From NCBI GenBank assembly GCA_002269645.1, contig NIVC01001355.1:143882-207881 (forward strand): 64,000 nt of DNA, in the 5' to 3' direction. Under the pieces are notes generated by a model that saw only the letters and a program-made list of their open reading frames with translations, was not told the DNA's origin and searched no databases. Below are positions 37,865 through 39,349 of the stretch, in pieces. Positions within the stretch are counted from its first letter, which is position 1. Every line of letters starts with the position of its first letter. A program made the translations under genes and the position numbers. Source of the DNA: Macrostomum lignano. Taxonomy: Eukaryota.

Positions 37865-39257
37865 TTAGTCTTGAGGCTTCAGCAACAGGGGTCTATGCAA
37901 CGTGTCCATGCAACCAGTTGGCGTCTGTCGCACGTCCATTTCTTTACCTTGCTCATCATAATAAGGCTCTCGCCTGCTAGTTAGATTGTGAATGACAGTG
38001 CGCTTCAGTGTCATAAATTCTGTCGAATGATCAGATTTCTGCAGTACCTTGCAGAACTCCTGGATAAACCAGGTACCAGACTGTGGATCCCTAATCGACC
38101 GAAAGCCGGGAAAGGTGGAGTGCAACACGTATATATCCTCGGTGTCTATTGAAGTCTTGTCGTCATCTGGGCCGTCGTAGGCCAAATTTCTAGGCTGTGG
38201 CGCTTTCAGTATGGCCTCGCCGCGGCAGAACTGCAGAAGGAACAATTTCGGTTTATCCTGGAGGCATCCGTTCAAAAATCTCATGACAATATCTTGAATG
38301 TAATAGAGCTTATTCCCATCACTCAACAAGCACTTCTTGCCTTTGCCGTGAGACATCATTATAAACAAAAATAGATCGCATCCGTCGTTCTTTATGGTAG
38401 TCTGTAAATCTTGGACAAATTTATCATACTCTCTCAGACCTGGGTCATGTAATTCCATAATTTTGTAGCCAAGCTTTTTGCCAAACAATTCTTTAATTGT
38501 TTCAACGTCCTTCGATGAGCCCATCCTAGGATTAAAACCTGGAACGTGCATTACGTTGATCAGGGCGCATAAACGTCGTTTGTTTGGATATGGCCGACTA
38601 GAAGTATGTGGATCGTCTTTAGAATCTCCAGAAGCCCAACTGACTGAGTAATTCGAACGAAAGATAGGCTTGGAAGCAATAAACTCTTCGATTAGCTGTC
38701 GGGCATTTGAAGAAGCTGAGAAAAACGGTTCCAACGTTTCGGATAGGTCAAGCGATTCTTCAGTAACTATGCTGTGCTCAACCAGCTCCGTCAAGAAGTC
38801 GAGAACGTCAGAGAAGTCGAAGTTATTTAACTGTTGATGCCATAGTAGTCTAAGCCTGCTCGCAACTGCGATGTCCTCCGTTCGAAACTGCGATGCCAGT
38901 CGGTGAAGCAAGCAGCGCAGGGGGGGGGGAGAGTGCGAAACGATCATCAAACTGGGCATCGGTGTTACACCTAGCCAGAGCATTGGCAAGAAATTCACAA
39001 TTGCAAACCCGTAAAGCGGCTATCAATGCATTTGACCAATTGTTAACCTCGCCATTGCGCTCTGGAGGGAACCAGTCGCGTAAGCGCTCAACCAGCAGGT
39101 CCGAGCTCGTCACTTCCGAATAGAGACGCACACTGATGGCATTTTGGGGGGCTAGTAGGAACAGCAGGTCCTTCAGCGGGGCACCTAAGCTGCCGAGCAG
39201 TGTGCGCGCAAAAGTAACCAGCGAACTATCGCCTACAGGTACGGAGTCTGACAACTG
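37865..39257 (-). CDS. caspase-8-like initiator caspase (two DED-like folds + caspase domain), single exon, +1 frame break in a 10-nt homopolymer at 38920-38929
   Basis: Caspase motifs RMGS..D, SHG, KPKLFLLQFCRG, STFPGFRSIR, GTWFIQ. DED-like LRCLLHRLASQF...VLDFLTELVEHSIVTEESLD plus a second upstream fold. Acceptor ttttttccAG at 39259-39258; AATAAA on minus at 37802-37807. Confidence 0.88.
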
Positions 39258-39349
39258 CTGGAAAAAAAGTGTGAAAAGAGTTCGGAAACAATAGGGCGAA
39301 TTATAAAAGATTTGAAAAGACCAAGTTGATGGTAACTGAATTGGTATCA

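What the first reader, a model, noticed from the sequence alone, without database searches (positions are those of the whole stretch)
39240..39280. Caspase ORF has no ATG but starts in frame at a splice acceptor (spliced-leader AUG candidate)
The minus strand reads ttttcacactttttttccAG|CAG TTG TCA GAC..., phase 0 with DED1, and the tandem NAGNAG acceptor is also in frame. There is no Met until the protease domain, and the 1.7 kb upstream is mostly tandem repeats before the ASH2L stop. Flatworm spliced leaders are known to end in AUG that can act as the initiator, which would give M-(Q)LSDSVPVG... and explain the missing start.
Basis: partly seen in the sequence, partly recalled or inferred. 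Interest (0 to 1): 0.7.

Follow-up and report, generated by a model that had tools for sequence, protein, structure and literature searches.

The report
Spliced-leader start site of a flatworm caspase
The window comes from the flatworm Macrostomum lignano, and the site is very probably a real trans-splice acceptor where the spliced leader's own AUG supplies the start codon of a caspase gene: a known flatworm mechanism, and this gene copy also carries a frameshift further downstream.

Summary
On the minus strand, ttttcacactttttttccAG|CAG|TTG sits at 39279-39254. It is the best acceptor-like site in the 1.7 kb between ASH2L and the caspase. Both AGs are in phase 0, and no in-frame ATG occurs before Met237 in the protease domain.

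The window is Macrostomum lignano (assembly Mlig_3_7, gene Mlig000746). Its 35-nt spliced leader ends in ATG, and its published trans-splice motif [T/C]TNCAG fits this site.

The strongest new evidence is indirect. In one of the two homeologous copies, CCAG| reads CATG|, which is the leader's 3' end. The same kind of scar occurs at the 5' junctions of the paralogous caspase and of ASH2L. The assembly was polished with RNA-seq reads, so these scars are best read as footprints of leader-bearing mRNA, and they mark 39258|39257 as a used junction (M-Q-L-S-D...).

Two caveats apply. This copy has a C10 run (38929-38920) that shifts the frame after codon 113. Its two homeologs carry nonsense mutations, and the trio evolves neutrally (omega about 0.9), so the gene may be decaying. 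The DED label rests on weak evidence only.

The mechanism is already known (Cheng et al. 2006). Interest is modest.

The parts
39258..39279 (-). Pyrimidine tract plus first acceptor (tcttttcacactttttttcCAG). The putative leader junction lies between 39258 and 39257.
   Evidence: Sequence. Top-scoring of 86 AG sites and matches [T/C]TNCAG. Homeolog g3 reads ...tttttttcATG| here.
39254..39257 (-). First codon CAG (39257-39255), whose AG is the second acceptor of the NAGNAG pair. The alternative exon start is 39254 (TTG).
   Evidence: The g3 scar CATG|CAGTTG favours the upstream AG.
38921..39257 (-).
   Evidence: Translation. 31-34% identity to paralog Mlig032996. Six predicted helices in residues 10-100, from a low-confidence model.
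38920..38929 (-). C10 homopolymer, the point of the frameshift. C9 or C6 would be in frame, and both homeologs have C6.
   Evidence: The paralog alignment continues as P-L-R-x-L-L across it.
38850..38852 (-). Stop codon of frame A as assembled. An ORF starting at the leader's AUG would end here after 136 codons.
37865..38919 (-). Frame B: the second helical prodomain half, the Peptidase_C14 domain (about 38578-37934, with SHG and QFCRG motifs) and the stop codon at 37867-37865.
   Evidence: Pfam PF00656, E 2.6e-30. ORF list.
37865..38983 (-). CDS annotated in GenBank for this copy (372 aa, MLWLGV...). It starts at an ATG in frame B that lies inside the out-of-frame end of domain 1, so the start is an artefact of taking the longest ORF.
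38549..38551 (-). First in-frame Met of the true reading frame (M237, MHVPG). It is the annotated start of homeolog g2.
39351..39614 (.). Tandem array of a 35-nt unit, 7.5 copies, in the putative outron. Each unit carries an acceptor-like motif.
40086..40798 (.). Tandem array of a 24-nt unit, 29.8 copies, in the putative outron or intercistronic region.
40935..48744 (-). Upstream gene ASH2L (547 aa; five exons predicted here), on the same strand. Its stop codon is at 40937-40935.
48786..48792 (-). TTGCATG, identical to the last 7 nt of the leader, at the 5' junction of ASH2L, 41 nt upstream of its ATG. Homeolog g2 has the canonical acceptor TTTTTGCAG| here.

Best explanation
The site is the spliced-leader (SL) trans-splice acceptor of the M. 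lignano caspase gene Mlig000746 (the copy on NIVC01001355.1). The pre-mRNA is probably transcribed from upstream, possibly as an ASH2L-caspase polycistron. It is cut at ttccAG|CAG (39258|39257) and joined to the 35-nt leader ...TTATTGCATG. The leader's terminal AUG then lies directly in phase with CAG TTG TCA..., so translation starts M-Q-L-S-D-S-V-P-V-G. No genomic start codon is needed, and the paralog Mlig032996 also lacks a stable genomic ATG (it is present in only one of three copies).

Shown here: the organism, the acceptor and its phase, the absence of any ATG, homology beginning just downstream, and the SL-like scars in homeologs.

Inferred: that the scars come from SL-bearing RNA-seq reads used in Pilon polishing, that the SL AUG is actually used for initiation, and the operon status.

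In the window copy as assembled, the SL-AUG frame breaks at a C10 run and ends after 136 codons. This is either a homopolymer error in the assembly (true length C9) or a real disabling mutation.
For: 1. Organism. P0225 (PAA70978.1, BOX15_Mlig000746g2, M. lignano) is 99% identical to the protease domain. The window's own annotated product, P0376, maps to GCA_002269645.1 contig NIVC01001355.1.

2. The leader. The M. lignano SL is CGGTCTCTTACTGCGAAGACTCAATTTATTGCATG. Between 21% and 39% of genes are trans-spliced, and the acceptor motif is [T/C]TNCAG (PMC8629364, PMC5730564).

3. The acceptor. The site is TTCCAG, the best of 86 AG sites, and in phase 0.

4. The paralog. Mlig032996 (34% identity over the whole length) is annotated as 5'-partial in all three copies. 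Its ORF opens within two codons of the equivalent position.

5. The scars. Homeolog g3 reads tttttttcATG|CAGTTG where the window and g2 read tttttttcCAG|CAGTTG. The paralog copies read ttttCATG| or ttttACTG| at their 5' end. The ASH2L 5' junction reads ttttGCATG|CAGCAG in the window and tttttGCAG|CAGCAG in g2, and the canonical acceptor in the homeolog was predicted before it was looked at. Among about 190 aligned [TC]TNCAG sites used as a control, 39258 is the only one changed from AG| to TG|.

6. Polishing. The assembly was polished with Pilon using RNA-seq reads mapped by STAR (PMC5730564).

7. Subgenomes. The assembly holds three subgenomes, S, L1 and L2 (PMC10733133). g2 and g3 share three substitutions and the C6 run against the window copy, so CAG is the parsimonious ancestral state.

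8. Operon. The distance from the ASH2L stop is 1,677 nt, or about 700 nt after repeats are removed. This is under the published 1-kb operon criterion.

9. Precedent. The flatworm SL AUG is an established initiator (Cheng et al. 2006, as cited in PMC12582326 and PMC9851317).
Against: No RNA read, 5' RACE product or peptide was available, so the junction is inferred from scars in the assembly. The g3 ATG could be a genuine genomic variant.

Several ATG-plus-phase-0 GT donor combinations exist upstream, for example ATGTAT|GTAAAT at 39985-39979. A cis-spliced 5' exon is therefore not excluded, and flatworm acceptors can serve both cis- and trans-splicing (PMC12582326).

The window copy is frameshifted (C10). 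g2 has E167* plus a 1-nt insertion. g3 has R125*, a 7-nt duplication and a 12-nt deletion. Of 8 substitutions, 6 are nonsynonymous or nonsense (omega about 0.9, n small), against about 0.18 for the paralog. The gene may therefore no longer make a caspase at all.
Confidence: 0.7

Rival explanations
1. The locus is a decaying neopolyploid duplicate. Whatever its 5' end once was, this copy makes no caspase. The C10 frameshift is real, and the missing ATG has no present functional meaning. This is compatible with the locus still being trans-spliced.
For: The C10 run contrasts with the in-frame C6 of both homeologs. The homeologs carry nonsense substitutions R125* and E167*, a 7-nt tandem duplication just before the catalytic His, and a deletion spanning the stop codon. 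Omega is about 0.9, against 0.18 for the intact paralog trio.
Against: The window copy has no nonsense substitution. Its only lesion is a long homopolymer, in a PacBio/Pilon assembly where such lengths are error-prone, and C9 would restore a 463-codon frame. With three subgenomes, losing two copies and keeping one is a normal outcome. Eight substitutions are too few for a firm omega.
Confidence: 0.4
2. The true start is a genomic ATG, as seen in homeolog g3 (ATG CAG TTG...). The window and g2 copies have lost it by mutation to CAG.
For: g3 reads ATG exactly in frame at this position.
Against: This reading needs the same two-base change in two copies, or a root on the g3 branch, whereas g2 and g3 group together against the window. 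The 'mutated' form happens to be a perfect trans-splice acceptor behind an 18/20 pyrimidine tract. It also leaves the parallel CATG/ACTG and GCATG/TGCAG differences at two other 5' junctions unexplained. Finally, g3 is itself the most damaged copy.
Confidence: 0.08
3. A short cis-spliced 5' exon carrying an ATG lies in the 1.7 kb upstream (or further) and is joined to the same acceptor.
For: Chance ATG-plus-phase-0 donor candidates exist, for example ATG at 40040 or 40064 leading to CTA|GTAAGA at 39995, and ATGTAT|GTAAAT at 39979. Sharing of acceptors between cis- and trans-splicing is reported in flatworms.
Against: No such exon is annotated in any of the three RNA-seq-based gene models, though this is weak evidence because those CDSs are truncated. 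58% of the interval is tandem repeat. In g3, about 7.6 kb of satellite DNA separates the acceptor from the rest of the interval. The paralog's mRNA is annotated as starting at the equivalent point.
Confidence: 0.07
4. Translation starts at an internal ATG, as in the database annotations: either frame-B ATG 38983 or M237 at 38551. This would give a caspase without a prodomain.
For: These are the annotated products: 372 aa for the window, 228 aa for g2 and 171 aa for g3.
Against: The three annotated starts differ between copies and track each copy's lesions, as expected when the longest ORF is taken from a damaged transcript. The first 21 residues of the 372-aa product are an out-of-frame reading of domain 1. 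The prodomain is conserved with the paralog across the frameshift point.
Confidence: 0.05

Closest known systems
[quoted passage not shown]
   Same: The leader ends in AUG. The acceptor is in phase 0 with an ORF that has no AUG of its own upstream of its conserved domains.
   Different: That work was done in Schistosoma mansoni with cDNA and translation assays. Here the organism is the free-living M. lignano, and the junction is inferred only from genome sequence and assembly scars.
M. lignano SL trans-splicing and operons (Wudarski et al. 2017, PMC5730564; Ustyantsev and Berezikov 2021, PMC8629364)
   Same: The same organism and assembly. The acceptor motif [T/C]TNCAG applies. A same-strand neighbour lies within 1 kb after repeats are subtracted.
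   Different: The trans-splice tracks for Mlig000746 could not be consulted. Operon membership is inferred by applying their criterion.
Initiator caspases with tandem death-fold prodomains (caspase-8/-10)
   Same: A C14 protease domain with SHG and QxCRG motifs. A prodomain of about 200 residues, predicted as two six-helix units. The paralog's second unit gives a sub-threshold Pfam DED hit.
   Different: No Pfam DED or CARD hit passes threshold on the window protein. Protease identity to animal caspases is only 25-32%. The structure model was too poor to test the fold.
NAGNAG tandem acceptors
   Same: CAGCAG, with both AGs in frame, so the two products would differ by one Gln.
   Different: Known mainly from cis-splicing. 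Here the g3 scar points to use of the upstream AG.

Membership tests
SL-trans-spliced mRNA that takes its start codon from the leader | The organism has an SL RNA whose leader ends in AUG | tested here: met
   The organism was identified as M. lignano (99% match to PAA70978.1; the window's own product maps to GCA_002269645.1). The published SL ends in ...TTGCATG. No SL RNA gene lies in the window.
SL-trans-spliced mRNA that takes its start codon from the leader | [quoted passage not shown] | tested here: met
   The site is TTCCAG behind an 18/20 pyrimidine tract, ranks first of 86 AG sites, and matches [T/C]TNCAG.
SL-trans-spliced mRNA that takes its start codon from the leader | No cis donor upstream is paired with that acceptor | tested here: inconclusive
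   Chance ATG-plus-GT candidates exist. None is annotated.
SL-trans-spliced mRNA that takes its start codon from the leader | An SL-exon junction is observed in RNA | not testable with these tools
   No read data were available. Indirect evidence comes from SL-type scars at this junction in g3 and at two other 5' junctions, in an assembly polished with RNA-seq.
SL-trans-spliced mRNA that takes its start codon from the leader | The leader AUG is in phase with the ORF, and no other in-frame AUG precedes the conserved region | tested here: met
   The junction is in phase 0. The first in-frame Met is residue 237. Homology with the paralog starts by residue 18 or so.
SL-trans-spliced mRNA that takes its start codon from the leader | The protein N-terminus begins with the leader-encoded Met | not testable with these tools
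   This needs N-terminal proteomics or ribosome profiling.
Caspase (Peptidase C14A) with DED prodomain | A C14 catalytic domain with a His/Cys dyad | tested here: met
   PF00656, E 2.6e-30. The motifs MSHGKG and QFCRGE are present.
Caspase (Peptidase C14A) with DED prodomain | Recognisable death effector domains | tested here: inconclusive
   The window prodomain gives only Dark_CARD at E 0.17-0.21. The paralog's residues 106-165 hit DED at E 0.0034, 18 bits against a cut-off of 35.9. A PDB profile search found nothing relevant. The AF2 model had a mean pLDDT of 43.7, so no fold search was run.
Caspase (Peptidase C14A) with DED prodomain | An uninterrupted reading frame | tested here: not met
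   The C10 run at 38929-38920 shifts the frame as assembled.
M. lignano operon (criterion of PMC8629364) | Adjacent genes on the same strand, less than 1 kb apart after repeats are subtracted, with the downstream gene trans-spliced | tested here: inconclusive
   The genes are on the same strand. The 1,677 nt minus 977 nt of repeats leaves about 700 nt. Trans-splicing of both genes is only inferred, from the scars.

The most novel reading that the evidence does not exclude
The CATG or GCATG 'scars' at three trans-splice junctions are not polishing artefacts but real germline alleles. In this reading, reverse-transcribed SL-bearing mRNA has converted the acceptor of one subgenome copy into the leader's 3' end, writing the leader's AUG into the genome and turning an SL-dependent start into a genomic one.
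Probability: 0.05. Interest if true: 0.75.

Novelty: new member of a known kind. Interest (0 to 1): 0.3.

Why it matters
For this gene, the finding means that all three database protein models (372, 228 and 171 aa) have the wrong N-terminus. The ancestral product is a tandem-prodomain caspase of about 464 aa whose start codon is not in the genome.

More generally, it shows that Mlig_3_7 carries SL-derived base changes at trans-splice acceptors. These can create false genomic ATGs or destroy AG acceptors, which may help explain why only 44% of annotated trans-splice sites show the motif. The same scars can also serve as read-free markers of trans-splice sites.

The biology itself, a leader AUG acting as initiator, has been established in flatworms since 2006.

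Tried and rejected
1. The word-indexed protein search with the joined caspase returned only distant caspases at 25-32% identity. The exhaustive HMMER search was needed to find the M. lignano proteins.

2. Rfam found no family in the window, and no SL RNA gene lies in the window.

3. An exact look-up of VAChT found nothing. Ten candidate N-termini of the mevalonate-kinase-like ORF were also not on record, so a second SL-AUG case could not be tested.

4. I first thought the paralog's upstream ...ACTCAA...TTTATT..CATG might be a fossil leader from a retrocopy. I dropped this because two of the three copies read ACTG and the similarity is that of an ordinary T-rich acceptor tract.

The g2 5' end was reached instead by widening the flank of an allowed look-up. 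The g3 locus did not reach ASH2L.

6. The AlphaFold model had a mean pLDDT of 43.7, so no fold search was run.

8. The third protein word-search was not used. HMMER over all 50% cluster representatives had already shown that no other relative shares the prodomain.

Full report
WHAT IS THERE

On the minus strand the window reads tcttttcacactttttttccAG|CAG|TTG TCA GAC TCC GTA..., with the first exon base at 39257 or, for the second AG, at 39254. The frame starting at 39257 is open back to a stop near 39353 and contains no ATG. It encodes QLSDSVPVGDSSLVTFARTLLGSLGAPLKDLLFLLAP...

After 112 codons it runs into a C10 homopolymer (38929-38920) and stops at 38852-38850. The rest of the gene lies in the +1 frame (38919-37865): a second helical region, then a Peptidase_C14 domain (Pfam E 2.6e-30) with SHG and QFCRG motifs. 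Read across the C run, the first in-frame Met is residue 237, inside the protease domain.

ORGANISM AND GENE

An exhaustive HMMER search found PAA70978.1 (BOX15_Mlig000746g2, Macrostomum lignano), which is 99% identical to the protease domain. It also found a full-length paralog, BOX15_Mlig032996g1-3 (34% identity, about 471 aa, all three copies annotated 'partial').

The window's own annotated product (372 aa, MLWLGV...) maps to GCA_002269645.1 contig NIVC01001355.1. ASH2L (547 aa) lies upstream on the same strand.

M. lignano carries three subgenomes, S, L1 and L2, with 1.9-2.4% SNP divergence (PMC10733133). I fetched the two homeologous loci (g2: L001/L007; g3: L003/L008) and the three paralog loci (L002, L004, L005).

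DOES THE ORGANISM HAVE AN AUG-TERMINATED LEADER?

Yes. The M. lignano leader is CGGTCTCTTACTGCGAAGACTCAATTTATTGCATG. Between 21% and 39% of genes are trans-spliced. The enriched motif at trans-splice junctions is [T/C]TNCAG (PMC8629364 and PMC5730564).

The site here is TTCCAG behind an 18/20 pyrimidine tract. It is the best-scoring of the 86 AG sites between the ASH2L stop and 39150. Being in phase 0 is only a 1-in-3 coincidence on its own.

WHERE DOES THE PROTEIN BEGIN?

The paralog aligns from its first residues. Conserved positions start at about residue 18 (R..L..L...KD..FLLA), and the alignment runs straight across the C run (P-L-R-x-L-L). This confirms that the ancestral frame passes through the run.

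The paralog's annotated 5'-partial ORF opens within two codons of the position equivalent to 39257. No large N-terminal exon is therefore missing.

A low-confidence AF2 model (pLDDT 43.7, not used for fold search) predicts six helices in residues 10-100 and five or six in residues 105-196. Pfam gives only a sub-threshold DED hit on the paralog's second unit (E 0.0034) and nothing on unit 1. A PDB profile search found nothing relevant. 'Tandem death-fold prodomain' is plausible. 'DED1' is not established.

THE KEY NEW EVIDENCE: LEADER-TYPE SCARS

Three junctions show the leader's 3' end in one copy where another copy has, or can be inferred to have, an AG acceptor.

- This junction. The three copies are identical for 70 nt upstream, apart from the length of a T run. 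The window and g2 read ...tttcCAG|CAGTTG, while g3 reads ...tttcATG|CAGTTG. These two base changes are exactly those that turn the acceptor into the leader's last four bases, CATG.
- The paralog's annotated 5' end. It reads ttttCATG|TTATTG in g1 and ttttACTG|TTATTG in g2 and g3. That is one or three steps from a canonical ttttACAG| towards the leader.
- The ASH2L 5' junction. Scanning the window for the leader's 3' 7-mer found ttcttttGCATG|CAGCAGCAG, 41 nt upstream of the ASH2L ATG. I predicted that a homeolog would show a normal acceptor there, and g2 reads ttctttttGCAG|CAGCAGCAG.

As a control, I examined about 190 [TC]TNCAG sites aligned between homeologs. Site 39258 is the only one where AG| became TG|. 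Clusters of adjacent substitutions occur at only about 2 per kb.

The methods of the assembly paper explain the pattern. The Canu assembly was polished with Pilon using Illumina DNA and RNA-seq mapped by STAR (PMC5730564). RNA reads that begin a few bases inside the leader would be forced across the acceptor and could overwrite it.

I therefore read the scars as footprints of leader-bearing mRNA. This marks 39258|39257 as a junction that is used, and it favours the upstream AG of the NAGNAG pair (product M-Q-L-S-D...). g2 and g3 share three substitutions and the C6 run against the window copy, so CAG is the parsimonious ancestral state.

CONTEXT

The ASH2L stop (40935) lies 1,677 nt upstream. 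Of that, 977 nt are two tandem arrays, leaving about 700 nt. This is under the 1-kb repeat-adjusted operon criterion of PMC8629364. ASH2L itself appears to be trans-spliced, judging from its scar. An ASH2L-caspase operon is therefore a reasonable inference, but it was not shown.

IS THE GENE ALIVE?

- The window copy has one lesion, C10. Both homeologs have C6, and C9 would also be in frame.
- g2 has a 1-nt insertion (codon 143 or so) and E167*.
- g3 has R125*, a 7-nt tandem duplication just before the catalytic His, and a 12-nt deletion over the stop codon.
- Of 8 substitutions among the copies, 2 are nonsense, 4 missense and 2 synonymous (omega about 0.9). In the intact paralog trio the split is 4 nonsynonymous to 7 synonymous (omega about 0.18).

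Two of the three copies are clearly pseudogenes. The window copy is either the surviving one, with a homopolymer error in the assembly, or also dead. As assembled, an ORF starting at the leader AUG ends after 136 codons.

The three database protein models (372, 228 and 171 aa) each start at whichever ATG opens the longest ORF left after that copy's lesions. None represents the ancestral N-terminus.

RIVALS

- A real genomic ATG, as in g3. This needs parallel double changes in two copies and leaves the other two scars unexplained.
- A cis-spliced upstream ATG exon. Chance candidates exist and sequence cannot exclude one, but nothing supports it.
- Internal initiation. This is contradicted by conservation of the prodomain.

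COMPARISON WITH WHAT IS KNOWN

Use of the flatworm leader's 3'-terminal AUG as initiator is established. According to PMC9851317 and PMC12582326, citing Cheng et al. [quoted passage not shown] Trans-splicing and operons in M. lignano are also published. This is therefore a new example of a known mechanism.

The by-product is of some practical interest to users of this genome: RNA-seq polishing has written leader bases into trans-splice acceptors of the public assembly.

VERDICT

- Observation: confirmed.
The mechanism is very likely, but it was not seen directly, and the frame in this copy is broken.
- Novelty: new member of a known kind.
- Interest: 0.3.

Noticed in passing
window 38920-38929 (-): A C10 homopolymer shifts the caspase frame between the two prodomain halves. 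Both homeologs have C6, which is in frame. It is either an assembly error (true length C9) or a real disabling mutation.
   Followed up: partly
window 48786-48792 (-); L007:~880-890: The ASH2L 5' junction reads TTGCATG|CAGCAG in the window (the last 7 nt of the leader) and the canonical acceptor TTTTTGCAG|CAGCAG in homeolog g2. With the leader attached, its AUG opens a 14-codon uORF ([15 protein letters not shown]) whose TGA overlaps the ASH2L ATG (AUGA at 48744).
   Followed up: partly
L002:3997-4000, L004:2994-2997, L005:2997-3000: The paralogous caspase Mlig032996 is annotated 5'-partial in all three copies. The four bases before the annotated start are CATG in one copy and ACTG in the other two, and no copy has an AG. 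The ORF would be in phase with a leader AUG, although an internal Met11 also exists.
   Followed up: partly
window 49679-50992 (-): A mevalonate-kinase-like ORF (GHMP kinase N and C domains) also lacks an in-frame ATG before its conserved GKVILHGEH motif. Two ATGs at 50957 and 50945 are out of frame. An acceptor-like AAG|CTA near 50984 is in phase 0. This could be a second SL-AUG gene or an indel in the assembly. Its annotated product could not be found.
   Followed up: partly
window 12485-14161 (+) and 34047-34988 (+): A cholinergic gene pair: a single-exon VAChT-like MFS transporter (70% identity to another M. lignano protein) lies upstream of choline/carnitine acyltransferase exons on the same strand.
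   Followed up: partly
L008:1400-8990: In homeolog g3, about 7.6 kb of unrelated satellite arrays (24-, 25-, 30- and 22-nt units) is inserted between the 35-nt array and the caspase acceptor. This pushes ASH2L out of reach.
   Followed up: partly
window 39351-39614 (-): Each 35-nt repeat unit upstream of the acceptor carries sequences like ttcccgCAG|cttCAG that match the trans-splice motif. They are possible decoy acceptors in the outron.
   Followed up: no
window 38921-39257 (-) compared with L001 and L003: The first disabling lesion of each of the three copies falls just after helical domain 1 (codons 113, 125 and 143), and no substitution lies in codons 1-112. A product made of domain 1 only, starting at the leader AUG, is conceivable, but the numbers are too small to tell (P about 0.08-0.2).
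   Followed up: partly
window 8177-9352 (-), 54805-56373 (+), 24541-24987 (+), 35581-35964 (-): Fragments of mobile elements: reverse transcriptase, RNase H and a DDE_3 transposase remnant. The window also holds many long micro- and minisatellite arrays (for example 42522-44075, 44800-46950 and 24720-26000).
   Followed up: partly
window 54237-54262 (+): The sequence ttatttgcatg|gtaac resembles the leader's 3' end plus its GTAAG donor, but nothing upstream matches the leader. The match is not significant by itself.
   Followed up: no
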